Below, piece by piece: positions 17,031-64,000 of a DNA stretch of 64,000 bases; positions within the stretch are counted from its first letter, which is position 1; each line of letters starts with the position of its first letter. The notes under the pieces are model-generated. The model was not told where the DNA came from. It saw only the letters and a program-made list of their open reading frames with translations, and did not search any database. Source of the stretch: Octopus bimaculoides (taxonomy: Eukaryota). Both the position numbers and the translations under genes were made by a program. The stretch spans positions 22,005,415-22,069,414 of the forward strand of contig NC_069004.1 in NCBI RefSeq assembly GCF_001194135.2, in the 5' to 3' direction.

Positions 17031-17189
17031 TCACGTGCTTTGACAACTCTCCGTATCAGATGATTCCATCATGGAAACAAAATTGTCTAATAATTCTGGG
17101 TAGGAAGCTCCTACTCTCTGTAGTAAGATATTGGCATAATCTTGTAATTTCTGGCAGTCTCGGTCACTTTTATGCAGTTCCAGTCGAAC
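17031..17189 (-). CDS. ERC1: ELKS terminal coding exon (FIP-RBD-like): VRLELHKSDRDCQKLQDYANILLQRVGASYPELLDNFVSMMESSDTESCQST*
   Basis: Acceptor tttttctgctatcattacAG; resembles the ERC1a C-terminal LQEFANAILQQIADHCPDILE; TGA at 17031-17033. Confidence 0.92.
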   Translation of the reverse strand, partial: VRLELHKSDRDCQKLQDYANILLQRVGASYPELLDNFVSMMESSDTESCQST

Positions 17190-26700: not shown

Positions 26701-29700
26701 TGTGAGTATGAAGAAGATGCTAAAAGAATTTTTTTAATAAAATAAAAAAATCCAACTAGAAGTAAACAAACAAAAACAACAATAGTACAGTGTTATTTTC
26801 ATTGCAGATGTAGCATGTAGCATCACATATAGAAGCCTGCATAAAAATGGTTTACTAAGAAGCGACAAATACAGCTAGTGCAGCCAGGAGTGTAGTTAAC
26901 ATCAGGTCTCTCTACTTTTATACATACAAGCATACATACAGACATACATACACACACATACAGATTCACACACACACACACACACATACTTACATACACA
27001 CAGTGGTCCCAAGACAGTGCCCCGTGGAACACCACTCACTATTTGTGTTTTCATAGAGGTGGCTCCATTGGCCACTACTACCTGACTTCTATCTTTCAGA
27101 AAGTCATGTAACCACTCTGCAAGTTTTCCAGCTATGCCAAGATCACATAGTTTGTGGCATACCATACCATGATCCACTTTGTCAAAAGCTTTTGCAAAAT
27201 CAAGGTATATTACGTCCACATTTGAGTTATTGAGTAACTGCCTCAACACCCAGTCATAATGTTGTAAGAGCTGGGTCAGGCAGCTCCTACCTGGTCGAAA
27301 GCCATGCTGGGTATCACTCAGCAAGTTATTTTCTTCAAGGAATGTGATTAGTTTTCCTCTGACTATCCATTCCATGACTTTGCTGATGTGTGAAGTAGGC
27401 CTATAGTTTTTGGCATCTGCTCTGCTTCCTCCTTTATGGATTGGGCATATCATATGTATATATATATATTTATTATTGAGTTAGAAAACAGGGAGATATA
27501 ATGGAAACAAATTAATTTATTAATTAATCAACATATTCACTTTTATTTTCTTTTATTCATTATATTACTTTACCCTTATATAATATAATCCATCATTCAT
27601 GATTATTATTATTATTATTATTGAATTGAAATAAAGGGAATAATTTTAATGCATATTCACACACATATGTATACATAAACATGTCTGTATATTCTGAGTA
27701 TTCCAAACATATCCTGATTGTCCTCTAAAAACCCTGACAATTTTCCTTATAAGTCGTTTAAAATGTAAAAGTATATTTTTATATGTTTTGTAATTTTAAT
27801 CTTATTTGAGATATGAAACAGTTGTTGGCGAATATGTTGATTAATTAATAAATTATTTTGTATCCATTAGATCTCTCTGTTTTCTTACTCGATAATAATG
27901 TTTGATATTTTATGGTATTTTTTACAATATATTCATTGAAGAAATATCTCTTCAAAATATAAATATTTTAAACCAGTGTACCTTGGATAAATATCCCTAT
28001 AATCAGTTTAAATATCCTCATTGTGACCACAAAAAATATATATGTATGTATGTGTGTGTGTATATATGTATGTATGTATGTATATATATAATTAAAACAA
28101 AGAAGTTAAATTCTGGTCATAAAGTTACCAAAGGTTTTGAATCCACAAAAGCCACAGCCTTGTGGACTGCTCATCAGACTCTATACAAATACAAAAAAAT
28201 TAAACTTTTTACCATGCGGACATGAGGAAATGCTCAGATATCAAGTTTTAATGGCTAATGTATAAAAACATTAATGAGGAAGGGTTATCTGCCTTGGACC
28301 AGAGGATAAAAAAACTCTTACAGACCTAAAATAGCCAAACCAGCAAACGGGCAGATCTAATTTTCCAGTAGGTAGTGCTTGAAATGGACACATCTAGAGA
28401 AAACGTCATTACGACTATTTAATGCGCCAGGTTTAGCGTAGTCCTTAAGAATTTTGATTCTCTACACAATGCAGATTTTGCAACAGCCACTTCCATTAAT
28501 ATGTGGGCTTGGATGTTCTATTATTTTCCACCTGATATCACATGGGTCCCTTGATCTTTGAGGTGCCACACATGGCTGATCAGAGATGTGACAAAATGTC
28601 TTTCTGAGACTCTGAAGGATGACTAGAGGTTGCGGAAGTGACGTTTGAAAGATGTACTGGCCTATCTGATATATTTACAAACTTGGGATGTGGCTATATT
28701 CACACTCCTGGTATATCTCTGGTAGGCTCCGGGTCCAAGGATGTTGTTGGTAACACCATTGCTGACGTTGTCAATATGGTGCAATGATCTGGTGGTGTTA
28801 TCGCTGTGGTTATTGTTTCTGGTCATATGGTTGGTGATGTAGCTGCCAGCATTAGTGTGGGGGCAGCTGGTGGCAACATATGGTGCAGGGCCACTCATCC
28901 CCAGGCCTGGAGCCTACCAGAGATATACCAGGAGTGTGAATAGAGCCACATCCCAAGTTTGTAAATATATCAGATTGGCGAGGACATCTTTCAAACGTCA
29001 CTTCCACAACCACCAGTCATCCTTCAGAGTCCCAGAAAGACATTTTTCATCTTTGGCACCTCAAAGATCAAGAGACCCCTTATGATATCAGGTGGAAAAT
29101 AATAGAACATCCACGCCCATATATTAATGGGAGTGGCTGTTTCAAAATCTGTATTGCAGAGAGAACCAAGATTCTTAAGGACGATGCTAATCCTGGCGTG
29201 TAAATAATCGTAAAGATGTTTTCTCTAAACGTGTCCATTTCAAGCGCTACCTACTGGAAAATTGGATCTGCCCATTTGCTGGTTTGGTTATTTTGGGTCT
29301 GTAAGGGTTTTTTATCTTCTGGTCCAGGGCAGATAACCTGTCCTCATTAACGTTTTTATACGTTAGACATTAAATCTCGATATCTGAGCATTTCATCATG
29401 TCCGCGTGGTAGAAAGTTTAAATTTTTTGTCTTTGTATAGAGTCTGATGAGCTGTCCACATGACTGGCTTTCATGGATATGAAACCTTTGGTAACTTTTT
29501 GACCAGAATTTAACTTTTTGTTTTAATAATTACTGCTCCATTCTTTAGAGTGTGCTTCTTTTCTGATATATGTTGTATTCTTTTATTCTTTTATTTGTTT
29601 CAGTCATTTGACTGCAGCCATGCTGGAGCACTGCCTTTAGTCAAACAAATCAAACAAATTGACTATATATATATATATAGAGATAGATATATACCTACTG

Positions 29701-30027: not shown

Positions 30028-33000
30028 CATATGAGAGGCTGCTGAAAAATTCCTGGCTTTGAGTAAAAGAAAATACAGGAGGATCAGTTAATTATGGTTT
30101 TTATTCAGCATATTCCCCTCTCACATTCACACACTTATTGCAGAGGTCCTTCAGTTTTTTCTAAGCCCTGTAAAAGAACTCAGAAGTTTGGGTCTCTAAA
30201 GTCAGGAACTTCTCATCACCCCCTCTGTATATATATATGTGCATGTATGTATGTATGCATGTATGTGTGTATGTATGTATAGTTAACAACTACCTAGATA
30301 CAGCACAGCATATATGTGATAAGATACTTTTTATTGAGGTTAAGGGAATATTAGCAAATAGGAAACATTACAAGCAAACAAGTTTAACATTCCTGACACT
30401 TTTAGTGATGAAGCAAATTTGAATATTTACATCTACACTAGAGTTTGAGTGGTTTGATCTCTAGTCATCCCCAAGTGTCTTATTTCTCTGGATGTGTATA
30501 TAATATGAATCCAGTCTGGTTGTATGTACATGTCCTGGAATAAGACATCTGATGACAGTCACAATCAGAGTTGAAACCAATTAAAGTGTAGCGTAAATTG
30601 AATTCAATTTGGTTCACATTGAGCATCCAGAAATAAATTTTTAATCACAATTAAAACAAACTGTTTATGTAAATAATAAAAGATGCTTTATTGCTAATGG
30701 TGAGGCCAGCAGTAAAAGAAAAGAAAAATAAGCAATTTTGTGCTGATTTCTGACATAGTTACAAGGTCAGACATTTTAAGGGAGGGTTTGGTTAATTGAA
30801 TTGACACCAGGACTTAACTTTGGTGAAATTTGAACTCAGAACATGAAAAAAAAAAAATGTAGAATCTTATTTACAATAACTATTCCACCTGACTGGCCTT
30901 TGTGCCAGTGGCATGTAAAAGCACCCACTACACTCTTGGAGTGGTTGGTGTTAGGAAGGTCATCCAACTGTAGAAACTCTGCCAGATCAGACTGGAGCCT
31001 GGTGTAGCCATCTGGTTCACCAGTCCTCAGTCAAATCGTCCAACCCATGCTAGCATGGAAAGTGGACGTTAAACGATGATGATGATGATGATCTAAATAT
31101 ATAATTGTAATCAAATTTCTGTATTTCTAAATTAAACTTTTCTCCTAGCTTTAAATCTTTTATTCTCCGAAGCAGCATATTGTAGACATCCTGTTAACTT
31201 TCTTAAGGATCCTGATGTTGGTAGCATTTTGCCAAACCACCAAGTTAGGGGGATGTAAATACACCAATAATGGTTGTTAAGTGGTGGTGGGGTCAAACAC
31301 AGACCAAAGACACACACACACACACACACATGATGTGCTTCTTTCAGTTCCTGTCTCTCAAATCCACTGACAAGGCTTTGGTTAGTCCAAGGCTACAACA
31401 GAAGACACTTGCCCAAGGTTCCATGCAGTGGGATTAAACCCAGAACCATGTAGTTGGGAAGCAATCTTAGAAATTAAATAAACATTTAAATATTTATTTA
31501 AATTTGTGAACTTCACTCTAAACCAATGTCTCTGGATTACTTACGAGTCTTCATAAGGAACCTCAATGTGATTGCTAGGTCTGCTAAAAAGGGCAGTCAA
31601 ATCTCTTTCAAATCATAACCTGACCATTTTACAAAAGGCAAATCAACTAGAGAATCTCTACGTAGTTGCTGAAACTACAAATAATATCAGCCAAATCTCC
31701 CTCAAATCACACCCTACCAGCCAAGAAGAGTGCCTCTATATAGTCATTTGATCTACTAGAAATAGCAGTCAAATCTCCCTCAAATCACACCCTGCAAGCC
31801 AATGAGGATGCTTCTGTATAGTTGTTTGATACCCCTAAAATACGGAATGGTCATGGCTGGAATGGCTTTGATATATAAAGTCTACTGGATTAAGTTTGAT
31901 CTGAGTCTGAACAACAACAATATCAACAACACCAGCAACAACAACAACAGCAACAGATGGTCAACAAAAATGTTTCCTGGGTTAAATAGTAGGAGTAGTA
32001 ACATCAAAAACAACAGCAGCAGCAGCAGCAACAATAACAGCAACAAGAACAACAGCAAGAATAACATCAAAAGTAACAGCAGCAATAACTACAAGCCAAC
32101 AAAGGATCCTTGATGTGGTCATCGAGTCTGCTAGAAATAGCAGCCAAATCATCTTCAAATCTTACCCTACCATCTTCCAGAAAGCAGAAGAGACATTAGA
32201 TAATGTAATCCTGTATACTCCCTAAAAAGATGGGATGGCCATGATTGGAATACCTTTGACTATAGGTCTACTCAATGAGGACTAACCTGGTAGCTAAACA
32301 ACAACATCAAACAATCGACAAAACAGTAATACCTTGCATGACGTTGCTTACCTCTTCACTGCTTAGCGTCCTCAGGGTGGCGACACTCACACTCGGTCCT
32401 TGCTGTATCCGTGGTAATCCCTCAAGCAACTGTGGATCTGTATCCAGAACAGCAGCCAATAACTGATCAATCAATGTACGTAGGCGTTTCTTGCTGTGTT
32501 CTATTTTCCGAACTGCTCTTATCACCTAAGGTATAAACGGCCTTCAGTACACCTGTGCTCGTAAGCTTGGAAGGGGACGGGATAGGATTTGGAGGGAAAG
32601 GAATTTTATAGATTTATTTTTATATACTTTTTTTTGTCCCAAAGAAGGTCGGCTGTGGTGTGGGAGAGGGTAGGGAGAAAATAGGGGTGAGTAGAGGTTT
32701 ATTAAAGCAAGACATGAATGAAAGAGAAAGATGACAGAAGAGGGACACCAATGTATATAGGAATCTTATTTGGCATTTACAGATATGCAAACACACATCT
32801 ACACGCATACATTCACACATGTCTATATGCCTATCTGTGTGTGTGTGTGTGTGTATGTATGCATGTATATCTTCACGCATGTATATATGCACGTTGTTTC
32901 ACTTTACATGTGTTTTCTATACTAACATAAGTTAATCACAGAATGTATCACTGAAGCATTGTTAAATAGATAACTTTTAATTTTCAAGGAAAAGATTCCT

Positions 33001-45880: not shown

Positions 45881-48800
45881 CATTGACACCGGATGAATGA
45901 AAGGCAAAAGTGATATTGGCAGAGTTTGAACTAAGAGTGTAAAGAGCCAGACCAGATACTACTTGTATAATTCAGCCAATCAATTGTCATTAAACAGTGC
46001 TAACCTTGGCTTGATTTGAACTCATATTGATAGAGACAGAATTAGATACTGTAAATTTCACAAAATTTCAAAGTTGACATAAAACTGCCTTTGGCCACCA
46101 TTTCCAGTGATAATAGATGTGAGGAGAGATTGGAGTATCTTAAATTTTCCGTAAATACAGAAGAGATGGAAGACAAGAATGGGTACAGCAAGGATTTGTT
46201 ATTTTTTGTTTTACTATATTTTTTTNNNNNNNNNNNNNNNNNNNNNNNNNNNNNNNNNNNNNNNNNNNNNNNNNNNNNNNNNNNNNNNNNNNNNNNNNNN
46301 NNNNNNNNNNNNNNNNNNNNNNNNNNNNNNNNNNNNNNNNNNNNNNNNNNNNNNNNNNNNNNNNNNNNNNGTACTTATTTTAATGACCCCAAAAGGATCA
46401 TCATCATCATTGTTTAACGTCCGCTTTCCATGCTAGCATGGGTTGGACGATTTGACTGAGGACTGGTGAAACCGGATGGCAACACCAGGCTCCAATCTAA
46501 TTTGGCAGAGTTTCTACAGCTGGATGCCCTTCCTAACGCCAACCACTCAGAGAGTGTAGTGGGTGCTTTTACGTGTCACCTGCACGAAAACGGCCACGCT
46601 CGAAATGGTGTCTTTTATGTGCCACCCGCACAAGAGCCAGTCCAGGGGCACTGGCAACGATCTCGCTCGAAAACCCTACAAGGATCATCTTTGGCAGAAT
46701 AATTTTAATAATATTGCAATTAATAAAAATGGCAATCCCTAGAGATTGTATATGTTGATGAAGCTACAATTGAACAACTATGGGAATAATTAATTAACCA
46801 AGAAGCATCTATCCAGTCACTAAATCTGCTAGAATTATCAGCTAAATTTCCTTTAAATCATTTCTCACCATTTTAAAAATGGAAAAAACATATTACAGAA
46901 TTGTTCAATAAATATAAAAGATTGTTATGGCAAGAACACCTGTGATTATAAGCCTTTACAGCTGTCCTGGCCTAAACAACACTATTATGGTTTCTAATAC
47001 AGACATTTTTTTGTTCTTTAGATTGGTGAGAAGGGAGGAAGTTAGACTACTCAAATCAGAGAAATGTCTGGAAAGCTTGCATGCATCTTATAAATGGGTG
47101 TGTATTCTCTGATTAAGCTTTAAGAAAACAAAAAATTAATTAGATAAATGCCACTTTATATTTCTACCTGAAGAGAGATAAAGGCATCTAATGGTAATAT
47201 TAATCCAGGCAATGGATTAAGTAAATCTTTACCAAACAGCCAAATTGTATATGTTTGAATATTAAATTATTGGTGTGTTTATAGTGTTTTGTTTCATTGC
47301 TATAATGCTCTATTGGACATATAATCATCATCATCATCATTTTAATGTCCACTTTTCCATGCAAGATTGGAGTTTAATTAAGGAAATTTTATATGGCCAG
47401 ATCCCTTCCTGTTGTCAACCCTCACCTGTTTCCAAGTAAGTTAATATTTCTTTGTGGCTAAACATGTTTTATCAGAATATTAGAAATGAATGACTCTGCT
47501 TGTTTCACTGTCATGTGAAACTCATTTACAATTATTGTGTGATATCAAGATAAGAAGACCCCCCCCCCCCACACACACACATACAAATACAAATACATGC
47601 ATCTTCCAGTTTCTTATTTCTTTACTGCCCACAAGGGGCTACACACAGAGGGGACAAAAAAGGACAGACAAATGGATTAAGTCGATTACATCGACCCCCA
47701 GTGTGTAACTGGTACTTATTTAATCAACCCTGAAAGGATGAAAGGCAAAATTGACCTCGGCGGAATCTGAACTCAGAACGTAGCGGTAGACGAAATATCG
47801 CTAAGCATTTCGCTCGGCGTGCTAACGTTTCTGCCAGCTCACCACCTATACACCTTCCAGTTTCTGTCTACCAAATCCATTCACAAAGCTTTGGTTAGCC
47901 CAAGGCTAGAATTGAAAATGTACCATGCAGCGGAACTGAACCCAAAACTATGTGGTTCAGAAGCAAATTTCTTAATGACACAGCTATAGCTTGATGTAGT
48001 ATTAGCCAACACTGTGTGATGTTCATGGAGAGAAAAAAAAAGGGACTAGTTGTACTTGTACATATCTCCTTCAGTTGGGATCTTTGTTAGCAGTTGTGCA
48101 CTCTCTTTAACAATCCGAAAACCAATTTACTTATAAAGCCACTAATGTTAGTAGAAGTTGATGTAAACAGAGTAGAGCAATTTTGCATATTTAACACTGT
48201 TTTGGTGGCTAGTTTGAACATGAAATTACTAATGTTTTAACAGTGTTTCATTCCATTGCATTTTATAGATTTAGATTATACATATTATATAGATATTACA
48301 TTTACCATTGGTTGATAAATCTACAGATATATTTTATAATATATTACAGCAATGAAACAAAGCACTTACACACCAGAAAGTTAATGTTCAAACTATCTGC
48401 CAAGATGTAAATTAATCAATCTCGTTTATTTCAGCACCTAACCATAATGGGTTTATAAGCAGTGTGTGTTTGTGGATAGTAAAGGAGGGTACACAGTTGC
48501 TGCTGATGATCAACACATGAATATATAGCTATCTCCTCTTTTCTCTCCAATTTATAGAAATGTTCTGTAGCATATCATAGCATTGAAGAGGTTGCAAATA
48601 GCAAACAACCAATTGTTTAACCAGCACATTAAACAAATAATTGATTAGTTAATTGGTTAGATATTTAACTAAGTGACTAACAATAAAGAAGTGATATTGA
48701 ATCAGTGCATCTGTTTATTATTATTGGCATGATGATCTTCCCAAGACAAGTTTTTAGTATATGAAAGCTTATGGAAGGCCCTACTTCATATATAGAATCT

Positions 48801-54142: not shown

Positions 54143-57100
54143 ATAGGTTCAAATTTGGGCACAGGGTCAGCAATTTTGAGGGGAAGTGATTAGTCAATAA
54201 CATCAACCCCTGTACTTGTTTGTCACTTTATTTCATCAACCTTGGAAAGATGAAAGGCAAAGTTGACCTTCATGGGAATTGAATACTGTAATAAAAATAA
54301 TGATGGTGATTTTTTTTACTATACTTAATTTACTATATTTAATGATAATGAATTAAAAAAAATTACTCAAGAAATTATTTTTATATTAATATATGTTATT
54401 TCATTTACTTAGCTCCTCCATACTGAATTAATGTCCAAGCATTAAAAAACTACCGAAAAAACTCCATAAATACATGCAATTGAAAGTGGGCTAGTGAGAA
54501 GATATTTAAAAAAGTCCACAATTAATGTGTAGTCTTTTTAAATATTCTCTCACTTGCCCGCTTTCAATCACAAGTATTTATGGAGATTTTCGGTAGCTTC
54601 GTAATGCTTGGACATTAATTCAGTATGGAGGAGATAAATCTTGTTTTGACTTTCTCCCTTAAAATAATTATATATATATAATTATTAATGATATATAAGT
54701 TGCTACGAATTGCTTTTTTCCATGCTGAATACCTGATAATTATCATTAATGTGATTTTTATCCTTATTTTATGAATATGTGTTATTTCAAATAATATTGT
54801 CTGAAGAAGAAAGCCTCTATCCCCATCAAATGAAAAGAAAAAAAAACACCAACAAAAAATAATTTTTTTTTTACATAAAAAAATTCAATATGATCAAACA
54901 ATTAAAATCTTTTTAAAAATTTTATCAAACAAAACACCAGAAAAAAAAATGTGGAGTAACATCAACAAAAACTGGAAAACACACACAAGAAAAAATTTAA
55001 TAACTAAAAATATCTTGGTGTAAAATAATAAAATAAAAACTTACATCAACATTTGTACTGAGGGATTGGGATGTATTATCGTTATCATTACTATCATTAT
55101 TACCATTATTATGTTTTTTTATTTCTTCAAATGTAGACACATGCACACAAAATGAAACACAGTATAAACTGTTTTTAGAAAAATACATATTCATAGAAAT
55201 AAATAAGGTAAAAAAAAAGAATATATATAAAATATATAAAAAGAAATAGGAGCACCAAAAATAAGTTTGAAAAAATAAAGAAAAAATGTGGAGTTCCATA
55301 TTTTAAAAAACAAAAATGTAACATATAAAACTTTATGGTGACAGTGGAAGTGGTTGTGGGAGTGGTAAAAAAAAAGAAGACATAAAGGAGCTTTGAGAGA
55401 GATAATAGTGGTATGGTAGCACACACACACACACACACACAAACAAACATTTACATATATTTGTGTAAATAAGGAACAGCATTTCTTTCAAACATGTTAT
55501 CTTAAAAACTATTACTGATGAGATTCCTATCACTTTTCCCCAGATTTTTCTATGTCAAAAATACATAAACTTACATGGCCTTGCCTTGTATGTGCTTAGT
55601 CAAAAATCTAAAAAGAGCTGTGGATGTCTGACCAATGTTGCAACTGCTATGGTGTTAACAACTTTCAGTTTTATATACAAGTTTATTGTATTACATTGAC
55701 AACACCCAGAATCCCAGTAGGTGTGACAACAGAGGTACATTATGCATCCTTAACTTCAGTGATTTTATCAGACATCCTGCCACTTATTGAAGTGCTTTCT
55801 AGTGAATATAAGAAACAACTGAGAAAACATCCTCTATATGATCATCTATGCACTTACTAACCACAACCTGACTTTTAACACAACTTTGAAGATGGTTACA
55901 AACTTGGTCATAAGTTTGTAGAAAAAATTTCTTCTTCCTTTAACATATAAAACATTTCAGATCTCTTTCCTATATTAATCAAAAGTAATATTAAAGAATA
56001 GAATAGAAATTGGTTAATAGACCCACCGGTGCTTTGTTTAACTAAACATGTATAAATGAAAGGCTGTACAATAATTACACACACCCATACATGTCTGTGT
56101 GTGTGTATACACATATACTCACACACTATGTATGTATATATATATGGACATTTATATATAATTCATACAAACACACACCCATACACATAGGTTAAAAGCA
56201 GAAGCAGCAGGCAGAGTGAAAGGAGAGAGAGAGAGAGAGAGAGGGAGAAAGAGGGAGAAAAGTGTGTGCTAGTGAGACAACTGCTAGGACGTGGACACAG
56301 ACTCAGGCATGGCAGCGGCTGCAGCAGTGGCCGTAGCATCTGCTGACCGGCGATCACGGTCAAAGTTCTCTACCTGTTCATCTGTGGCACCTTTCATACG
56401 GTGTACAAGAGACTTCTGGCTTCCAGTGGTTGAGGGTTCTTTCTTCTTCTGTAGGAGACGCATACGAGTTTCAGTCTACAAAGAAACAACAAAAACATTA
56501 AACACCACTAACAAGAGGGTCAATCTATAATAAATGTGAAATTCTGTCTGTCCTGTACCTCAGCCTACATTTGCTCTAAATAGACAAACACCTTTTTGGA
56601 ATCAGGATGATTCCAGGATTGAAAATCTGCCTTTCATTTGGTTCTTGAACATCCAACATTGAGATCTGATTTAAATGCATTTGGGCTGCTATTTCTAGCA
56701 GGTAAAGCTTGGCTGATTTATGCCATCTTAGTGGAGTTTGTAAGATGACATCAGAGATCAAGAGAGAGATAAATGACATTCGCTTTGTTAATTTTATGTT
56801 GAGATAAGAACTTTGGGACAAATTGGCCAACAGCTGCAATTCAACCTGGAACTGGAACAGTAGAATGATTGCATTACAGAATTAATTCTCACTTATCCTT
56901 AACCTCTGATCAAATACCACCGGGGCATATAGTCATTATAGATGTTATTTGGCTCTCTTTAGTTTTGGGCCACAGGCCCATTTAGCCCTCCACAGGAGCT
57001 AGCTTATAAGTCTGCACAGAGTGCGGCTTTTAAGCTAGTATATCAATAATGAGCAAACTGTGACCCATAGAACATTCTGAATGGCACATCTAATGAAAAA

Positions 57101-58735
57101 TTATTTTGAATTGTTTAGTAGTGTGGCCCATCTGATGATGATTCATGTCCATTGTAGCCTGCTTCTTGAAAAAGGTTGCTCCTACCTGCTATATATGGTC
57201 ACTCAAAATGCTAGGAATAGCAACCGTGTCTCCCTTAAATTATACTCTACCATTTTAAAACAGCGACATACATAAGATAATATAGTTGTAGATAATCCAC
57301 TAAAAAAAAAAAAGGATGTTCATTGCTGAGTCCCTTTACATTTCTAACGAGTACAAGAGCTACAAACATAATTAAATAAATCAATCCAAAGTTCTTGATG
57401 GGCACTTTCTTTTATCATCTCTTGAAAGGATAAAAGGGGTTGACAAAATATTACAATATCAACAAGATTTGATCTCAGAGTATAAAGGTATGGCCATGTG
57501 TTTAAGAAGCTTGCTCTGCAACTACATGGTTTTAAGTTCAGTCCCATTGTGCAGTACCTAGGGCAAATGTCTTCTACTATAGTCCCAGTTGAGTGAACTT
57601 GATAAATGGAAATTGTGTGGAAGCTTGTCATATAAATACACAATCTTTATATGTGTGTGATTGTTAGTCTTTGTGTTTGTTCTTCCACTCAACTTGTGAA
57701 AAAGTGATGGTTTGTTTACATCCATGTAACTTAGCTGTTCACAAAAGAGACCTCCTACGGCTGCAGTCTAATGACAGAAACAGGTAAAAGAATAATGTTA
57801 TTGTTCACTAAAATGTGATATTGAAGAGAAAGTAATCTTCATCTTGCCTCTGATTTTTGTGTTTTGGTGTTTTTTTCTTATTTGTTGTTCTTAAAACTTA
57901 CCAATTCCTTAAGTTGTTGTGCTAGTTTTTCCTTCTCTTTTTCAAGTCTTGTGATGTCTTCGACATGCCGTTGCTTTTTTGTACTGGTCATTTCAAGTAA
58001 GGCAATGTTAGCGTCTTTCTCACTGATTGTAGCTTGGATGGCTTCTTGTCTGTAAAGATAAAGTTAGAGGTTACAGTCAGTTCTTCTTGCCATGGGTCAA
58101 ACACAAAGGTTCCAATGGGATGGAAACACAAGAAACGGAGGAAAAGTTTCTATATACTTGCTAATGTTTTTCATATCACAACCTAATTTGAATTATGTAT
58201 CTTTAAAACTCCCTAGTAACTTAACCCATCTTATATATATATAATCCAAGAGAGTTAGGGGTTGAGGATCCAACCCAATAAGGGATAGTATCTATCCAAT
58301 ATACTGCTGGGAGGGTACCCAATTATTGTTACACTACTGTTATACCAAGTGCAATAAGTGGGTGCAGGTAAAAGGGGGTTATTTTACCCTAAATTTATAT
58401 AGCAATAAGAAAATGGAGGAGAATATGCGGTACCCATTGACTTGCAGACACTGTATTCCGTTGATTAATCTGTCTATTTATTTTATAACTAAACTGACAA
58501 AAAACACAATATACAGATACTTATGGCATACCATGTCATATTAACAATTAAGATTTCTCCAATTGCTAAATGTCCTTTAAATTTGAAATCTTAATTGTTA
58601 ATATGACATGGTATGCCATAAGTATCTGTATATTGTGTTTTTTGTCAATTTAGTTATAAAATAAACAGATTAATCAACAGAATACAGTGTCTGCAAGTCG
58701 ATGGGTACTGCATATTCTCCTCCATTTTCTCATTG

Positions 58736-58781
<46 letters not shown>

Positions 58782-60704
58782 GGAAGAGGACAACAAGCAC
58801 TGAGGTATAACAAGCATCTCAATTCATTTAAAAGAGTGGAGAGTAAGGAAATAAAGTTCACAGTTCATATATACATCGCTTTATATACATAGATAGCATT
58901 TTTCTCGATGGCCCGATAGTTGAAGAGATGGTGGCGTGGGTTTCTGCCCCGACATTCGAAACTCGAGTTTTATCATGACTACCAAATAATTGTCACATAT
59001 TATATTTACAGATACCAACATACATATATATATATATATTTGTTTTACATGATTGAACGCCTGCGTCATATCCTGTAAGTAGTTTTGAACTTTATATTTT
59101 CTGACGCTACTCTATCTCTTTCTCTATCTCTATAACTTTTTCCCCTTCTCGTGCTTCTTTCTGTTACTACTATATTTCTCTCTTCCTCTCGTTGCTCACC
59201 TATTTTCTACTTCCTCCCCTTGTTTCTCCCTCTACCACTCTCCCTTCCTTACCCCTCGTGGTCACATGTGTCCACGTACTAATTCTTTTCTTCCTTGGCT
59301 ATCGCCAAGCAAATACGCAGACTACTGTCCCACTTCCAGTTCGTTGCTTCACAGCGTTCCACATACACATAATTTTTCACGTCTGGCCGTAAAGCCTTTT
59401 CCGTTTGTTTTCCTGTCTTGTTTTCTGTCCGCCACTACATTCCTCCATGGTACAGTTTAATTTGTGTCTACAAATTTAATTTGTGATCCATGGTTAGAGC
59501 CATTTTAACAATGTGTCCTGCCCTACTCTTCGAAACGCCTGTGTTAGAATGGGGGTAGCTGATGAAGGAAAATGTTCTCTATGTGGCCTGTGTGTTTTCT
59601 GTACTCTGGTTATTATTATTTTTTTGTCTACATTTTGTTTGCAATGTCCTGTACCCAGATATGCACCTATATATACAGGTAGACGTAGGTATGCACATAC
59701 CTGTACGNNNNNNNNNNNNNNNNNNNNNNNNNNNNNNNNNNNNNNNNNNNNNNNNNNNNNNNNNNNNNNNNNNNNNNNNNNNNNNNNNNNNNNNNNNNNN
59801 NNNNNNNNNNNNNNNNNNNNNNNNNNNNNNNNNNNNNNNNNNNNNNNNNNNNNNNNNNNNNNNNNNNNNNNNNNTATATATATAAATAATTATATATATA
59901 ACACATAAAACATATATATATATAGCGTAGGAGTGGCTGTGTGGTAAGTAGCTTGCTTATGAACAACATGGTTCCAGGTTCAGTCCCACTGCGTGGCACC
60001 TTGGGCAAGTGTCTTCTACTATAGCGTCTTGGTATGATACATCATAACATTTACGCAGCCTAAACTAAGAGTTATGCTTAGTGATAAATACTTATAATTA
60101 AGTTATAAGTAACGAGATTATCATTATAGCTTTTAAATAAGAAACAATAATATTTGTTATAACTTACGAATGATAAAATTGTAAATAAAGATATAGTATA
60201 TCTCACACTTCAACGACCTGTTGTGATAAACAACCACATAAAACTGGGTTTTAGCCAGACCAAAAAGAAAGAAAATAAAAAAGACTCACTTCATTTCATA
60301 GACTTCTTCTAACTGTTTGTGTCTTTCAGAAACAAGACGGCGTAATTTGGCATCCTTCTCCTCCAGCTGACGTGTCAGAGCTCCAACCTTGGCAATGTGG
60401 TCACTTTGAATGGATTTCATCTTCTCTAATTCAGCAGTCAGTTCATAGACCTTAGAGAATGGAGGTAGGTAAAGACATATTAACAAAATACAGAAAAATG
60501 TGAATGATAGACCATGTAAGAAAATATGTACAAGAGAGAGAGAGAGAGAGAGTGGAAGGAGAGTGAGAACAGAAAGAGATAGTGAAAGGGGGAGAAATGG
60601 AAACAGTGGGAGATGGATAGAGACCCAGCAGGCTGAGTAGGGTACCATTCTGAGTTAAAAGGAAAACAGCCAAAACACTTGAACAAATAAGGGAGATTCC
60701 CTTC

Positions 60705-61518: not shown

Positions 61519-62186
61519 TCAGGGAGACAAAAAGGCAAAATAATGGATGAGAGTGAATGGAGGGAAAGAGAGTTAGAGAAACAAAGTCAGCAGAAATAAA
61601 ACTCCTCATTTTGATGGGTATCAGGCTAGCGTGTGTGTGTACATGTGTGTATCTGTTAATACATACATGATAGACTTGTAGATTGATTTTGATGTATGAG
61701 TGTTCAGTAGGTTGATCAAGAGGACAACCCATTCATTGAATTAATGTACGAAGTGGTCAAATACTCTGAAGACACATGTGTACCTTTAATGAAATTCTCA
61801 GGTAGAGGTTGGCATGACACAAGTGTGACAATGGAAGACATGTGAGGTACAGATACAGTCCACCTGATGAGCTTCTATACAATTTCTGTCCACCAAAAAT
61901 TCAATCAAAAGGTTTGGGCCAACTCATGGTAATGATAAATGTACCACCCAAGATGCCATGCTGTGGGATCAAACCTTGAATCTTGTGATTGCAAAGAGAA
62001 CTTCATAACTACTCAGCCATATCTACACACACACACACACTTTTATAGACTCACTTTTGCTTCTGTTTGTTGGATCTTGCTTTCTTGCTCTGCCATGACC
62101 ATTTCTCGTTCGGCTGTTATTGTTACACTCTCTCGCAGAGCTTCCTCTAGTTCTTCCACACGATCATCCATGTGTTTTATGGCATT
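17031..62186 (-). CDS. ERC1: ELKS/RAB6-interacting/CAST family (ERC1/ERC2, bruchpilot-related) gene, 3' six coding exons; 5' part lies beyond the window
   Basis: The spliced peptide NAIKHMDDRVEELEEALRESVTITAEREMVMAEQ...ERHKQLEEVYEMKQEAIQATISEKDANIALLEM...TETRMRLL...DEQ|VIRAVRKIE...SEE|VRLELHKSDRDCQKLQDYANILLQ...PELLD resembles recalled ERC1 motifs (EELEEALRESVQITAEREMVLA; KQEALLAAISEKDANIALLE; FANAILQQIADHCPDILEQ). All introns are GT-AG with compatible phases. Likely the invertebrate co-orthologue of ERC1/ERC2. Confidence 0.93.
17473..17518 (-). ncRNA. Minimal type I hammerhead ribozyme motif (Penelope-associated type), core intact
   Basis: Minus strand GACAC-CUGAUGA-A-GGCUG-gagggUAUAU-CAGCC-GAAAC-GUU-GUGUU: stem I GACAC/GUGUU, stem II GGCUG/CAGCC, palindromic AACGUU stem III. 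Confidence 0.8.
17801..17846 (+). ncRNA. Degenerate hammerhead motif, inverted sister copy
   Basis: GACAC-CUGAAGA-A-GGCUG..CAGCU-GAAAU-GCU-GUGUU; U16.1 replaced by C, so probably inactive. Confidence 0.65.
19143..19369. mobile_element. TTAA-flanked MITE (piggyBac-type ends)
   Basis: TTAA-CTCTTTAGCATT ... AATGCTAAAGGG-TTAA; second copy 37500-37731. Confidence 0.8.
20034..20416. mobile_element. Fold-back MITE with about 160-bp inverted arms
   Basis: TTATACTTGGGGATGGGTCATATTTTGCCAATTAAACAC ... GTGTTTAATTGGCAAAATATGACCCATCCCCAAGTATAA. Confidence 0.9.
22146..23074 (+). mobile_element. Internally deleted mariner (Tc1/mariner) transposon
   Basis: TIRs TATGAGGCGGTAC/GTACCCCCTCATA with TA flanks. 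N-terminal remnants EQRASMKFCF, GVSWSSCQRIL, RVATKFMPH and C-terminal CFEYWKTRLGRCIASNGEYFE; catalytic core missing. Confidence 0.9.
25330..25756 (+). mobile_element. 3' fragment of an RLE-type non-LTR retrotransposon (CRE-like) with A tail
   Basis: AALNVKERKINKYRGLAGHYQFVLITIETSGVL..TINFLCKIG resembles the CRE-type restriction-like endonuclease C-terminus; AATAAA plus an A-run at about 25746-25756. Confidence 0.6.
27001..27450 (-). mobile_element. CR1/L2-group LINE reverse transcriptase fragment
   Basis: PIHKGG..NYRP..SKVMEWIV..QHGFRPGRSCLTQLL..VDVIYLDFAKAFDKVDH..SGVPRGTVLGP (RT domains 1-4); truncated between microsatellites. Confidence 0.92.
27470..27898. mobile_element. AT-rich MITE with about 70-bp TIRs
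   Basis: 27470-27540 is the reverse complement of 27829-27898. Confidence 0.75.
28121..28182 (-). ncRNA. Hammerhead motif in the PLE left arm, G12>A mutated
   Basis: AGAGU-CUGAUGA-GCAGUCCACAA...UUGUGGAUUC-AAAAC-CUUUG-GUA-ACUUU. Confidence 0.6.
29439..29498 (+). ncRNA. Hammerhead ribozyme motif in the PLE right arm
   Basis: AGAGU-CUGAUGA-GCUGUCCA...UGGAUAU-GAAAC-CUUUG-GUA-ACUUU: core and stems I-III formable. Confidence 0.7.
30030..30229. mobile_element. Mariner-derived MITE (about 200 bp)
   Basis: TIRs TATGAGAGG..GCTGAAAAATTCCTGGCTTT / AAAGTCAGGAACTTCTCATCACCCCCTCTGTA in TA context. Confidence 0.7.
31905..32105 (+). repeat. Mixed (AAC)/(AGC) trinucleotide tract, intronic
   Basis: Gives poly-N/S or poly-L pseudo-ORFs. 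Confidence 0.85.
32352..32525 (-). CDS. ERC1: ELKS exon (58 codons, phase 0/0): VIRAVRKIEHSKKRLRTLIDQLLAAVLDTDPQLLEGLPRIQQGPSVSVATLRTLSSEE
   Basis: Acceptor tttataccttAG, donor GTAAGC; resembles ERC1a IIQPLLELDQNRSKLKLYIGHL...RDPLILRGL. Confidence 0.9.
33893..34912 (+). mobile_element. Tc1/mariner (maT-like) 3' remnant interrupted by a 5S pseudogene and a SINE
   Basis: YVWQQDS..PNS..CNPLDYYVWGAVE..LKARIMAAF..VQKSCRRF*SRLETVVEANGNFIE (third catalytic residue D); right TIR ..TTATTCACCGCACCCTG-TA at 34841-34912. Confidence 0.8.
34273..34391 (+). pseudogene. 5S rRNA: 5S rRNA pseudogene (full length)
   Basis: GCTTACGGCCATATCATGTTGAGAGCACTGGTTCTTGTCCGATCACCGAAGTTAAGCAA...GTACTTAGATGGGTGACCGCTTGGGAA..GGTGCTGTAAAC; several CpG>TpG changes; no oligo-T terminator; solitary. 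Confidence 0.9.
36796..37300 (+). repeat. (GA)n and purine-rich tract spanning an N-gap
   Basis: Direct observation; source of the ER/SL pseudo-ORFs. Confidence 0.95.
37776..39410. mobile_element. Non-autonomous element with about 290-bp terminal inverted repeats and a nested SINE
   Basis: 37776-38068 is the reverse complement of 39106-39410; nested SINE at 38765-39085. Confidence 0.7.
39410..40585 (-). mobile_element. Head-to-tail cluster of an (ATT)n-tailed tRNA-SINE
   Basis: Five minus copies (AATCCTTTCTACTATAGGCACAAGGCCTG...GAATTTGAACTCAG...CTGCCAG). More at 43290-46395, 47660-47830, 49830-50020, 53790-54290, 1-290, 8630-8850; plus copies 24265-24440, 50740-50830. Confidence 0.85.
40587..41432 (-). 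mobile_element. (ATT)n-tailed retroposon of unknown class with a nested SINE
   Basis: Shares a core of about 170 bp with the TIR arms at 37.8 and 39.1 kb; nested SINE 40623-40875 flanked by an 11-bp TSD GCCCTGATGCA. Confidence 0.6.
41433..42254 (+). mobile_element. Dong/R4-clade non-LTR retrotransposon 3' fragment (CCHC plus RLE), ending in (AAT)n
   Basis: CRICRKRVKSVTHIVSAC (CX2CX8HX4C); DFDFQIDKVLEHRRPE..KEREKIGKYGDL..IPIVIGALG..LQKSALLGT; stops and frameshifts. Confidence 0.88.
44065..46395 (-). mobile_element. Second head-to-tail cluster of the (ATT)n-tailed SINE
   Basis: About 8 minus-strand copies separated by (AAT)n tracts. Confidence 0.8.
49400..49680 (+). mobile_element. RTE-like LINE 3' tail fragment with (ATG)n end
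   Basis: KECQKVHVEGTSGNGRPRK resembles RTE ..VEG.R.RGRP; tail AAAATGGATGTAAAA-(TGA)n. Confidence 0.55.
50373..50604. mobile_element. hAT-type MITE, related to 804-1129
   Basis: CAGTGATTCTCAAC ... GTTGAGAACCACTG; TSD remnant CTTTAAAC/CTCAAAAC. Confidence 0.75.
54412..54634. mobile_element. About 220-bp fold-back palindrome flanked by TA
   Basis: CTCCTCCATACTGAATTAATGTCCAAGCATTA ... TAATGCTTGGACATTAATTCAGTATGGAGGAG. Confidence 0.88.
56284..56373 (-). CDS. ERC1: Alternative read-through C-terminus of ELKS: VENFDRDRRSADATATAAAAAMPESVSTS*
   Basis: In-frame, GC/CpG-rich 29-codon extension past a non-consensus donor, ending TAG; followed by SINE-free U-rich UTR-like sequence. Confidence 0.6.
   Translation of the reverse strand, partial: VENFDRDRRSADATATAAAAAMPESVSTS
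56374..56475 (-). CDS. ERC1: ELKS exon (34 codons, phase 0/0): TETRMRLLQKKKEPSTTGSQKSLVHRMKGATDEQ
   Basis: Acceptor ttgtttctttgtAG; donor CAG|GTAGAG. TETRMRLL aligns to ERC1 TQNRMKLM, and DEQ| to PDQ|. Confidence 0.88.
57902..58049 (-). CDS. ERC1: ELKS exon (148 nt, phase 2/0): QEAIQATISEKDANIALLEMTSTKKQRHVEDITRLEKEKEKLAQQLKEL
   Basis: Acceptor ctttatctttacAG, donor GTAAGT; ISEKDANIALLE hallmark of ELKS/CAST/Brp. Confidence 0.96.
58396..58742. mobile_element. About 347-bp fold-back palindrome ending in (TA)n
   Basis: Arms 58396-58557 and 58585-58742 nearly identical (one 4-nt indel); 27-nt loop. Confidence 0.92.
60290..60450 (-). CDS. ERC1: ELKS exon (161 nt, phase 0/2): VYELTAELEKMKSIQSDHIAKVGALTRQLEEKDAKLRRLVSERHKQLEEVYEM
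   Basis: Acceptor ctccattctctaAG, donor GTGAGT; coiled coil ending ER.K.LEEV.EMK as in ERC1. Confidence 0.95.
62055..62186 (-). CDS. ERC1: ELKS exon (44 codons, phase 0/0): NAIKHMDDRVEELEEALRESVTITAEREMVMAEQESKIQQTEAK
   Basis: Acceptor ttttctgtcttttAG, donor GTGAGT; conserved EELEEALRES.ITAEREMV motif. Confidence 0.95.
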
Positions 62187-64000
62187 CTAAAAGACAGAAA
62201 ATTAATTGCAATTAAGACACAACATCTAAATTATCAATGACTCTTTATATTTACACCTCAAACTTTCAATACTTTCAAGTCTTGTATCTGTTGGTAAGGT
62301 TCTTTTTTTTTTGTTTTTTACTTGTTTCAGTCAGATTAATCATCCTCAGGACTTATTTTTTTAAAGCCTAGTAGTATCTTATTGGTGTCTTTTGCTGAAT
62401 TGCTAAGTTATGGGGACATAAACACACCGATACTTGTTGTCAAGTGGTGGTGAAGGGACATACACAGACACAAAGACACACACACACACACACATATGAT
62501 AGGCCTCCTCAAGCTTCCATCTACCAAATCCACTCACAAGGCTTTGGTCAGACCAAGGCTTTAGTAGAAAACACTTGTCCAAGGTACCACACGGTGGAAC
62601 TTAACACACACCCATGTAGTTGGGAAGTAAGTTTCTTACCACACAGCTACACCTGCACCTTGTATGTTTGTTTTTTTTGCCAATGGCTTAGATAGAGGGG
62701 GAAGAGCAATGGTTAATTGCTTTTTGCAGGGCACCCGAAACTGAAGTTGAGGAAACAAAAAGGAAGACACCACAATACACAGGATATTGCAATACAAAGT
62801 AATACATCAAAACAGCCAGTTCCTTAGCGACTGTGTATTTAGTCTGGATGATTACAATACAGATTCATAGGTGCAAGTATGGCTGTGTGGTAAGAAATTT
62901 GCTTCTCAATTACATGGTTCTGAGCTCAGACCCACAATGTGGCACCTTGGCTAAGTACCTTCTGCTATAGCCTTGGGCTGACCAAAGCCTTGTGGGTTGA
63001 TTTGGTAAATGAAAACTAAAAGAAGCATAGTACGCGTGTGTGTGAGAGACTCTCTCATTGCCTTGACATCATGTGATAGCTGAGTGTTACCACCAAGAAA
63101 GTGGTGTCCTTTGTTTCCAATCTTCTGTTAAAAACATATCTGGTCATTGGAGAAATATTACCTCAATTGGAAACAAGTCAGGGCTGATAAAAAGAAGGGC
63201 ATCCGACCATAGAATATCTGCTTCAACAAATTCCATCCAGTCCATGCAAGCATGGAAATGTGAATGTTGAAACAATGACTCTGCTGAAGGTTCACAAGGA
63301 CCAGGTGGTGGTGTTTAACTGGATAATGGATTAAGTCTGTTACCCAAAAACGTTTATAGAAGGTTTCTTCTGCTCAAGTTTATTCATAAGACTTGGGTTG
63401 ACCCAAGGCTATTGTAGAAGATACTTGCCCAAAATGTCACATAATATGGGATTGAACCTAGAATCAAAGGACTGCAGATGAACTTGACCACACAGCAATG
63501 TATGTAATGTGATGGTAGTAGCAGCAATATTACAGCTCTAGCAAGGAGAAAGACCAAGGAGGACATATGAAAAGAGGGTGGATTCCCATTTGGTTAACCT
63601 TGGATCTGATAAGAAGGCAGACACAGAAAGTGAAGGGTGACTGATATAAAACAAGAGAAATGTATAATTTACACCAAAAGGGAAAGATAGATACATATAT
63701 ACTAATATATGTTTGTTATATAGGTATTCTTTAAATTCATGTGTTTGATGACCATACAGATCTCTACAAGATTTAAATTAGCAAACCACAGAATATACTT
63801 CAAACAACCAATGTAATATACAAATTTCAATACAGAACATAGAAATTGTAAACTACACGGCTAAAACTGTTTCATCAGACACATTAGTATATCACTTTCT
63901 CATTTGCTGACCATACATTTCATACAAAGAGCCATCACAATTCACTGTAATGAAGCTCAAGAAATAAAATCAGATAGAAAAACATTAGCTGACAGCATTG

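What the first reader, a model, noticed from the sequence alone, without database searches (positions are those of the whole stretch)
56284..56475. ELKS C-terminal isoform switch at the vertebrate junction, but with a different short tail
Seen: DEQ| splices in frame to the exons leading to the FIP-RBD, yet the donor CAG|GTAGAG is non-consensus. Read-through gives a coding-like 29-aa tail (VENFDRDRRSADATATAAAAAMPESVSTS*), then U-rich UTR-like DNA with AATAAA at 55682-55687 and 55118-55123. Established (recalled): vertebrate ERC1 switches at PDQ| between a FIP-RBD form and a neuronal DEEEGIWA form that binds the RIM PDZ domain. Inference: an ancient or convergent isoform switch, here by intronic polyadenylation, yielding a tail without the IWA motif.
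Basis: partly seen in the sequence, partly recalled or inferred. Interest (0 to 1): 0.7.

Follow-up and report, generated by a model that had tools for sequence, protein, structure and literature searches.

The report
Possible short-tail ELKS isoform in octopus
An exon of a cephalopod ELKS/ERC synaptic-scaffold gene can be read straight on into its intron to give a 29-residue alternative protein end, at the same point where vertebrate ELKS switches tails. The DNA of that extension looks exon-like, but nothing available here shows that the isoform is actually made.

Summary
On the minus strand, exon C (56475-56374) of an ELKS/CAST gene ends ...GATDEQ at a weak donor, CAG|GTAGAG. Read-through gives VENFDRDRRSADATATAAAAAMPESVSTS*, with the stop at 56286-56284. 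Splicing instead joins in frame to exon D (32525-32352) and exon E (17189-17031), which carry the FIP-RBD. The DEQ| junction aligns column for column with vertebrate PDQ|.

- An open run of 29 codons or more occurs at 18-22% of positions.
- Another frame is open for 68 codons over the same DNA.
- AATAAA occurs at background density.

New evidence partly rescues the idea. The 87 nt are the most GC-rich stretch of the window (61%). They hold 6 CpG in a genome with CpG o/e 0.23 (P about 3e-5 at the intronic rate). They are not a repeat, and the donor is the weakest of the gene's five.

No IWA-type exon exists in the sequenced window. GIWA is ancient, since C. elegans has it. The vertebrate switch uses a stop-containing cassette exon, not read-through.

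No transcript or orthologous cephalopod DNA could be reached. Verdict: a plausible composite terminal exon (about 0.45). An ordinary intron start with a GC-rich splicing element is nearly as likely.

The parts
62055..62186 (-). ELKS exon A (NAIKHMDDRVEELEEALRESVTITAEREMVMAEQESKIQQTEAK), donor AAA|GTGAGT
   Evidence: falls within the Pfam Cast match
60290..60450 (-). ELKS exon A2 (VYELTAELEKMKSIQSDHIAKVGALTRQLEEKDAKLRRLVSERHKQLEEVYEMK), ends in phase 2, donor GAA|GTGAGT
57902..58049 (-). ELKS exon B (QEAIQATISEKDANIALLEMTSTKKQRHVEDITRLEKEKEKLAQQLKEL), donor TTG|GTAAGT
   Evidence: (homologues carry PF10174)
56374..56475 (-). ELKS exon C (TETRMRLLQKKKEPSTTGSQKSLVHRMKGATDEQ), phase 0 at both ends. 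Its 3' end is the branch point, homologous to vertebrate ...PSPDQ|
56368..56376 (-). Weak 5' splice site CAG|GTAGAG. It lacks +4A, +5G and +6T and is the lowest-scoring of the five donors in the window
56284..56373 (-). Read-through extension: 29 codons (VENFDRDRRSADATATAAAAAMPESVSTS) plus TAG. GC 61%, 6 CpG, unique in the window, 6 YGCY motifs
56194..56261 (-). CU-rich tract, a (TCTC)n microsatellite, directly after the stop. Followed by TG/TA microsatellites
55682..55687 (-). AATAAA 597 nt after the stop, with UGUA just upstream and GUUGUU about 25 nt downstream. The better of the two candidate poly(A) signals, but present at chance density
55118..55123 (-). Second AATAAA, inside an A-run, with no GU-rich downstream element
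32352..32525 (-). ELKS exon D (VIRAVRKIEHSKKRLRTLIDQLLAAVLDTDPQLLEGLPRIQQGPSVSVATLRTLSSEE). Phase 0, first A-type exon, best Pfam RBD-FIP stretch, donor GAG|GTAAGC
17031..17189 (-). ELKS exon E coding part (VRLELHKSDRDCQKLQDYANILLQRVGASYPELLDNFVSMMESSDTESCQST*), the C-terminal end of the long form

Best explanation
Exon C of a cephalopod (octopus-like) ELKS/ERC gene is a composite exon. When its weak donor CAG|GTAGAG is used, the mRNA continues over a 24-kb intron to exons D and E and encodes the long, FIP-RBD-bearing 'A-type' ELKS. When the donor is not used, transcription reads on and 29 further codons are translated (VENFDRDRRSADATATAAAAAMPESVSTS), up to the TAG at 56286-56284. The message is then ended by cleavage and polyadenylation inside the intron; the AATAAA at 55687-55682 is the best candidate signal. 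The product is a short ELKS that keeps the whole coiled-coil (Cast) part, lacks the FIP-RBD end, and has no IWA ligand for the RIM PDZ domain.

Shown: the exon structure, the frame, the weak donor, the homology of the branch point, and the exon-like composition of the extension.

Inferred: that the extension is translated, that a poly(A) site is used, and any tissue specificity.
For: 1. The branch point is the same as the vertebrate A/B branch point (alignment). The long path is real: it gives Pfam Cast plus RBD-FIP and matches the junction in Sepia ERC1.
2. The donor is the weakest of the five in the window, 6.4 against 8.4-11.2. It is the only one without +4A and +5G.
3. The 87 nt after the donor are the most GC-rich 87-mer of the 64-kb window apart from one unexplained patch and one microsatellite (61%, top 0.06%). 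They carry 6 CpG where the intron averages 0.57 per 87 nt (Poisson P = 2.9e-5). CpG o/e is 0.75, against 0.23 for the window and 0.59 for the exons. The other four introns start with GC 0.29-0.40 and 0-2 CpG.
4. The stretch is unique in the window, whereas the other CpG-rich patches are SINE-like repeats.
5. Three of the six CpG lie in CGN arginine codons, which is this gene's preferred arginine codon type (16 of 21). GC3 is lower than GC1 and GC2 in the exon-C frame.
6. No GT inside the extension is both in frame with exon D and donor-like (sequence read directly). If the extension is coding, it must therefore be terminal.
7. No known RNA family and no unusually stable fold (z = +0.35) offers another reason for the composition.
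Against: - ORF length is uninformative: probability 0.18-0.22, or 0.44 given the composition. A different frame is open for 68 codons over the same DNA.
- AATAAA occurs at background density.
- The peptide is low-complexity (alanine run, weak GCN tandem repeat). It has no Pfam match, no homologue among 1.84 billion representative proteins, and no significant similarity to arthropod ELKS tails.
- The only cephalopod ELKS protein that could be reached (Sepia) is the long form.
- The GC-rich block is also a dense YGCY cluster (6 motifs, top 0.2%), which could act as an intronic splicing enhancer instead.
- The CpG-free state after the stop is partly forced by the CT and TG microsatellites that follow.
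- No RNA evidence and no orthologous DNA were available.
Confidence: 0.45

Rival explanations
1. This is an ordinary intron start. The in-frame ORF is a by-product of GC-rich composition. The GC-, CpG- and YGCY-rich block is an intronic splicing element, for example a Muscleblind-type YGCY cluster, possibly working with the CU-rich tract behind it. It helps the weak CAG|GTAGAG donor to be recognised. No tail-bearing protein is made in meaningful amounts.
For: - The ORF is not significant, and a second frame is open for longer.
- There are 6 YGCY motifs in 87 nt, top 0.2% of the window.
- A weak donor needs help.
- The tail has no protein homologue anywhere.
- Read-through-like tails directly after PDQ also appear in vertebrate ERC2 gene predictions (P0060, P0061, P0064, P0073). 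Such ORFs therefore arise easily at this junction.
Against: - Known intronic enhancers do not require CpG retention, and 3 of the 6 CpG sit in CGN arginine codons of the exon frame.
- The block starts at the donor itself rather than tens of nt into the intron.
- GC3 is lower than GC1 and GC2 in the exon frame, though this is weak evidence from only 29 codons.
Confidence: 0.35
2. The extension is transcribed, but as an unproductive or differently processed RNA. One possibility is partial intron retention. Another is use of a cryptic donor beyond the stop, for example CCG|GTGGGT at 56027, CAT|GTAAGT at 55575 or GAT|GTAAGT at 55045, which splices on to exons D and E. The stop at 56286-56284 then acts like the stop of the vertebrate ERC1b cassette exon. 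It either yields the short protein with the A-type exons as 3'UTR, or targets the mRNA for nonsense-mediated decay as a dosage control.
For: - Donor-like sites scoring 7.6-10.7 lie 250-1330 nt after the stop.
- The vertebrate B form is made by a stop-containing internal exon with the A-type exons downstream (PMC11310779, PMC10913846).
- The donor is weak.
Against: - Such donor-like 9-mers are frequent: 127 minus-strand GT sites score at least as high as the real exon C donor.
- No data show their use.
- An extension kept only for decay would not need exon-like CpG retention over its whole length.
Confidence: 0.12
3. The GC- and CpG-rich block is young, neutral DNA with no function. It could be a fragment of a mobile element, a recent insertion or expansion of a GCN repeat, or an assembly artefact next to the exon.
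For: - The other CpG-rich patches in the window are repeats.
- There is a weak GCAGCGGCCGCA x2.2 tandem signal at 56312-56338.
- The assembly has N gaps.
Against: - The block has no other copy in the 64-kb window.
- It is contiguous with exon C, with no gap nearby.
- It has no protein-level relative.
Confidence: 0.05

Closest known systems
Vertebrate ERC1/ELKS1 C-terminal A/B switch (ERC1a = long, ubiquitous, FIP-RBD end; ERC1b = short, neuronal, ...PDQDEEEGIWA, ligand of the RIM PDZ domain)
   Same: - Same gene family (Pfam Cast).
- Same branch point: octopus ...TDEQ| falls in the column of ...SPDQ|.
- The same kind of long continuation (VIRAVRKIEHSKKRL aligns with IIQSLLELDQNRSKL, and the FIP-RBD follows).
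- The proposed short form would likewise drop the FIP-RBD end.
   Different: - The vertebrate short form comes from inclusion of a separate, PTB-repressed, stop-containing cassette exon (PMC10913846, PMC11310779). Here the extra codons are contiguous with the exon, as read-through of a weak donor.
- The tail has no IWA and no similarity to DEEEGIWA.
- Expression of the octopus short form is unproven.
C. elegans ELKS-1 and other invertebrate ELKS ending in GIWA
   Same: Single-gene invertebrate ELKS with the conserved ISEKDxNIALLE block shortly before the C-terminus.
   Different: These proteins end ...GIWA (PMC5830537; P0069 and P0070 end ...EDEGIWA). No ORF ending in [IVL]W[AS]* with an acidic lead-in exists on the gene strand of the window. 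Three N gaps lie in the intron between exons C and D.
Composite terminal exons / intronic polyadenylation isoforms (general class, e.g. the membrane versus secreted IgM heavy-chain switch; named from general knowledge)
   Same: A weak 5' splice site competes with a downstream intronic poly(A) site. There is a short in-frame read-through peptide and then a stop, and the truncated protein lacks the C-terminal domain.
   Different: Here the poly(A) site is only a consensus hexamer at chance density. No 3'-end data exist.
Arthropod ELKS-like proteins with short non-IWA tails (...DNDERTGSDSSV, ...FDEKTGSDFSL, ...EDGLRSLTSL; database fragments P0046, P0054, P0040)
   Same: They show that ELKS proteins outside vertebrates and nematodes can end soon after the TExxMRLLQ block with a serine-rich tail that is not IWA.
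   Different: - There is no significant sequence similarity to the octopus tail.
- The arthropod tails end in a hydrophobic residue, like a class I PDZ ligand, whereas the octopus tail ends ...VSTS.

Membership tests
ELKS/CAST/ERC family (Pfam PF10174 Cast) | Significant match to the Cast coiled-coil profile, including the ISEKDANIALLE block | tested here: met
   The joined exons A-E hit Cast at 1.3e-27, 96.8 bits, against a cut-off of 29.1. Homologues of exon B all carry PF10174.
ELKS A-type (ERC1a-like) C-terminus | In-frame continuation from the ...DQ| junction into a FIP-RBD (PF09457) end | tested here: met
   RBD-FIP at 1.9e-10, 40.9 bits, against a cut-off of 23.3, with two stretches in exons D and E. 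The junction is phase 0 to phase 0. The same junction is present in Sepia ERC1.
ELKS B-type (ERC1b-like) C-terminus | Branches off at the ...PDQ| junction | tested here: met
   Alignment A1 puts DEQ| and PDQ| in the same column.
ELKS B-type (ERC1b-like) C-terminus | C-terminal ...GIWA motif (RIM PDZ ligand) | tested here: not met
   The tail ends ...PESVSTS. There is no [IVL]W[AS]* or acidic-Wx* ORF end on the gene strand between exons C and D, or elsewhere in a plausible context.
ELKS B-type (ERC1b-like) C-terminus | Encoded by a separate stop-containing cassette exon repressed by PTB (PMC10913846, PMC11310779) | tested here: not met
   The extra codons are contiguous with exon C, with no intervening intron. 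A CU-rich tract follows the stop (56261-56194), but its function is unknown.
ELKS B-type (ERC1b-like) C-terminus | Neuron-specific expression and binding to the RIM PDZ domain | not testable with these tools
   No expression or binding data were accessible.
Composite terminal exon / intronic polyadenylation isoform | Suboptimal 5' splice site at the exon end | tested here: met
   CAG|GTAGAG scores 6.4 against 8.4-11.2 for the other four donors (approximate matrix).
Composite terminal exon / intronic polyadenylation isoform | In-frame stop soon after the donor | tested here: met
   TAG lies 29 codons downstream, although this ORF length is expected by chance.
Composite terminal exon / intronic polyadenylation isoform | Functional poly(A) signal and cleavage site downstream in the intron | tested here: inconclusive
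   AATAAA at 55687-55682 has a UGUA/GU-rich context. Hexamer density equals background, 1.3 per kb.
Composite terminal exon / intronic polyadenylation isoform | Transcripts that end in the intron | not testable with these tools
   No cephalopod transcript-derived sequence was found in the protein or contig collections.
Protein-coding sequence under selection | Exon-like composition and CpG retention in a CpG-depleted genome | tested here: met
   GC is 0.61 and CpG o/e 0.75, against 0.23 for the window and 0.59 for the exons. Poisson P = 2.9e-5.
Protein-coding sequence under selection | Frame and stop conserved in orthologues, with mostly synonymous change | not testable with these tools
The Logan contig L001 ends before exon C. 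Exon C is not recognisable in the distant mollusc loci L002-L004.

The most novel reading that the evidence does not exclude
Cephalopods have replaced the ancient GIWA end of neuronal ELKS, the RIM-PDZ ligand conserved from nematodes to mammals. In its place is a lineage-specific tail made by read-through of exon C and intronic polyadenylation. ELKS-RIM coupling at cephalopod active zones would then be wired differently, or be dispensable. The A/B branch point would have been reused with a new mechanism and a new peptide.
Probability: 0.15. Interest if true: 0.65.

Novelty: new variant of a known kind. Interest (0 to 1): 0.4.

Why it matters
ELKS/CAST is a core scaffold of the presynaptic active zone. 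Its short C-terminal form, ending in GIWA, is what ties it to RIM in vertebrates and nematodes.

Suppose an octopus makes its short form at the same junction, but by a different RNA-processing route and with a tail that cannot bind RIM in the known way. That would be a concrete example of how a complex nervous system that evolved independently rewired a conserved synaptic module. It would also give a directly testable peptide.

If the tail is not expressed, the locus is still a tidy example of a GC- and CpG-rich element placed behind a weak splice donor. The practical point for annotation is that read-through ORF length and AATAAA hits carry no weight in this AT-rich genome, whereas CpG retention does.

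Tried and rejected
1. **Annotated or transcript-derived proteins with the tail.**
   - A word-indexed search with exons B + C + tail found only genomic exon-B ORF fragments from molluscs.
   - An exhaustive HMMER search with exon C + tail found only Sepia ERC1 (long form) plus three low-complexity false friends.
   - An exact look-up of the 59-aa ORF found nothing on record.
   - A search with the 292-aa long form returned no cephalopod entry. All of its hits were 501 aa or shorter, so full-length ELKS proteins seem to lie outside that index.
2. **Orthologous DNA.**
   - L001, a Logan contig whose exon B is identical to that of the Sepia pharaonis ERC1 protein (P0021), stops 535 bp after exon B.
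   - Three distant mollusc loci (L002-L004) have exon B but no recognisable exon C within 10 kb. The tblastn 'hits' there were a common repeat peptide.
   - A metagenome scan found nothing.
3. **An IWA-type exon in the window or in the mollusc loci.** None was found.
4. **Homology of the tail to arthropod ELKS tails.** E-x-F-D...S-x-D looked similar by eye, but BLASTP alignments stop at the start of exon C. Rejected.
5. **RNA explanations for the GC-rich block.** There is no Rfam family over it, and the mir-like hits at 56075-56190 are TG/TA microsatellite palindromes far below gathering scores. The fold is not stable.
6. **Alternative in-frame donors inside the extension.** None is plausible (read from the sequence).
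7. **Antisense gene.** The 79-aa plus-strand ORF at 56291-56530 is just the mirror of the open minus-strand frame.
8. **Literature.** Wang et al. 2002 is not held. The supplement of the Aplysia/Octopus scaffold paper, which covers CAST/ELKS, is not held either. No paper links ERC1 with intronic polyadenylation in a relevant way.
Full report
**What is there.** The window is AT-rich (about 34% GC), gap-containing eukaryotic DNA. It carries SINE-like repeats of the kind I recall from octopus genomes; that recollection is not tested. The last six coding exons of an ELKS/CAST/ERC gene lie on the minus strand:

| Exon | Coordinates |
|---|---|
| A | 62186-62055 |
| A2 | 60450-60290 |
| B | 58049-57902 |
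| C | 56475-56374 |
| D | 32525-32352 |
| E (coding part, stop TGA) | 17189-17031 |

Joined, they give a 292-residue open frame. It hits Pfam Cast (1.3e-27, reaching the end of the model) and RBD-FIP (1.9e-10, with stretches in exons D and E). The closest protein that could be retrieved is ERC1 of the cuttlefish Acanthosepion (Sepia) pharaonis (CAE1176229.1). It has the same ...GATDEQ|VIRAVRKIEHSKKRL... junction and nearly identical D and E exons.

**Check of the observation.** All items hold.
- The donor is CAG|GTAGAG.
- AATAAA sits at 55687-55682 and 55123-55118.
- DEQ| is phase 0 and enters exon D in phase 0.

In an alignment with vertebrate ERC1 A forms, vertebrate B forms and two unidentified, presumably invertebrate, GIWA forms, octopus ...TDEQ| occupies the same column as ...SPDQ|. 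After that column the A forms continue and the B forms end in D(E/D)EEGIWA. 'At the vertebrate junction' is therefore correct.

- In this window an open run of at least 29 codons starts at 19-22% of all positions and at 17-18% of AG|GTR sites.
- With the tail's own base composition the probability is 44%, and a different frame is open for 68 codons across the same DNA.
- AATAAA occurs 1.3 times per kb on this strand, so 1.7 are expected in the 1283 nt after the stop and 2 are found.
- U content there is 39.8% against 35.1% in the rest of the intron.
- The donor is genuinely the weak one. With an approximate position-weight matrix (frequencies recalled, AT-rich background) it scores 6.4 against 8.4-11.2 for the other four. 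It is the only donor lacking +4A and +5G. Still, 3.5% of all GT sites on the strand score at least as well.

**New evidence.** The 87 nt between the donor and the stop stand out sharply.
- GC is 61%, in the top 0.06% of all 87-mers. Only one other unexplained patch and a (CCCACACA)n microsatellite reach that level.
- There are 6 CpG, in the top 0.35%.
- The genome is strongly CpG-depleted: o/e is 0.23 for the window, 0.59 for the six exons and 0.75 for the tail.
- The rest of this intron has 0.57 CpG per 87 nt, so six has a Poisson probability of 2.9e-5.
- The first 87 nt of the four other introns have GC 0.29-0.40 and 0-2 CpG. The 1283 nt after the stop contain only 2 CpG.
- The other CpG-rich patches in the window are SINE-like repeats, whereas the tail has no second copy.
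- Three of its CpG lie in CGT, CGC and CGG arginine codons, which is this gene's usual arginine codon type (16 of 21).
- GC3 (0.52) is below GC1 and GC2 (0.66) in the exon frame.

The stretch therefore looks like sequence under constraint, in an exon-like way.

Three caveats apply.
- The CpG-free state downstream is partly forced by CT and TG microsatellites.
- The block is also a dense YGCY cluster (6 motifs, top 0.2%). It could be a splicing enhancer behind a weak donor.
- Twenty-nine low-complexity codons give little statistical power for frame-specific tests.

No Rfam family and no unusually stable RNA fold (z = +0.35) explains the composition.

**What could not be obtained.** No transcript-derived or annotated cephalopod protein with this tail turned up. 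No orthologous cephalopod DNA for exon C and its downstream flank could be reached:
- The related Logan contig ends too early.
- The Sepia locus is too long for the tool.
- The distant mollusc loci do not show exon C.
- The metagenome scan found nothing.

**Comparison with what is known.**
- Held and Kaeser (PMC5830537) state that both vertebrate ELKS genes have long A and short B C-terminal variants. The B variant carries the PDZ ligand GIWA and dominates in neurons. C. elegans ELKS also ends in GIWA.
- Two further database proteins of unknown, presumably invertebrate, origin end ...EDEGIWA (P0069, P0070). The B tail is therefore ancient.
- The vertebrate ERC1b form is described as inclusion of an extra, PTB-repressed exon (PMC10913846). 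In primates a stop-containing skipped exon 18 rises during neuronal differentiation (PMC11310779). This is a cassette-exon mechanism, not read-through.
- In the window no ORF ends in an IWA-like motif on the gene strand. Three N gaps lie in the intron between exons C and D.
- The octopus tail has no similarity to GIWA tails or to arthropod ELKS tails. It ends ...VSTS, which is not a canonical PDZ ligand (general knowledge).
- If real, it shares the branch point and the consequence (loss of the FIP-RBD end) with ERC1b. It does not share the mechanism, the peptide or the RIM-binding motif. It fails the defining IWA test for a B-type tail, so it should not be filed as one.

**Verdict.** The most likely single explanation (about 0.45) is a composite terminal exon. 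A weak donor competes with intronic cleavage and polyadenylation, which gives a short, IWA-less ELKS. Nearly as likely (about 0.35) is an ordinary intron start whose GC-, CpG- and YGCY-rich block serves splice-site recognition, with the ORF incidental. Minor alternatives are an unproductive, stop-containing extended exon that uses a cryptic donor further downstream (about 0.12), and young neutral DNA (about 0.05).

The finding is a reasonable, testable lead of moderate interest. It is not established. Genome-annotation pipelines with RNA-seq support may already list such an isoform, which I could not check.

Noticed in passing
L002:8124-8321 and L002:10082-10231: A distant mollusc contig (ENA ERZ25069865) carries two partial extra copies of ELKS exon B (RQEGLQAAICEKDANIALLEMTSTKKQRNTE and SVTAAICEKDASIALLEMTSTR). 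They lie about 2 kb upstream of the complete exon B. They may be exon duplicates, either decaying or mutually exclusive.
   Followed up: no
database proteins P0046, P0054, P0040-P0043, P0069, P0070: Arthropod ELKS-like fragments end in serine-rich tails that resemble class I PDZ ligands (...GSDSSV...GSDFSL...RSLTSL). Two proteins of unknown, presumably invertebrate, origin end ...EDEGIWA. The ELKS C-terminus seems to have been replaced more than once outside vertebrates and nematodes.
   Followed up: partly
database proteins P0060, P0061, P0064, P0073: Several vertebrate ERC2 gene predictions carry unrelated short tails directly after ...PSPDQ (for example PDQ|VSSIAAHLQDPFSPWGILR). This looks like intron read-through at the same junction in automated annotation.
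   Followed up: no
window 32410-32525 (minus), exon D: The best Pfam RBD-FIP stretch falls in exon D (residues 178-216 of the joined protein), and a second stretch falls in exon E. The A-type end therefore contains two FIP-RBD-like helices.
   Followed up: no
window 56194-56261 (minus): A 68-nt CU-rich tract, (TCTC)n, starts 23 nt after the tail's stop codon. CU-rich tracts are PTB-type motifs, and the vertebrate ERC1b exon is reported to be PTB-repressed. However, CT microsatellites are common throughout this window.
   Followed up: partly
window 47690-47877, 46500-46700, 62380-62680 (minus): CpG-rich SINE-like repeats, some of them tRNA-like. They account for most CpG-rich patches in a window whose overall CpG o/e is only 0.23, which indicates heavy CpG decay.
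   Followed up: partly
window 28830-28925 (minus): A non-repetitive patch of about 61% GC with no CpG, inside the intron between exons D and E. No obvious ORF and no explanation.
   Followed up: no
window 56291-56530 (plus): A 79-aa antisense ORF mirrors exon C plus the tail. It is treated as a by-product of the open minus-strand frame.
   Followed up: partly
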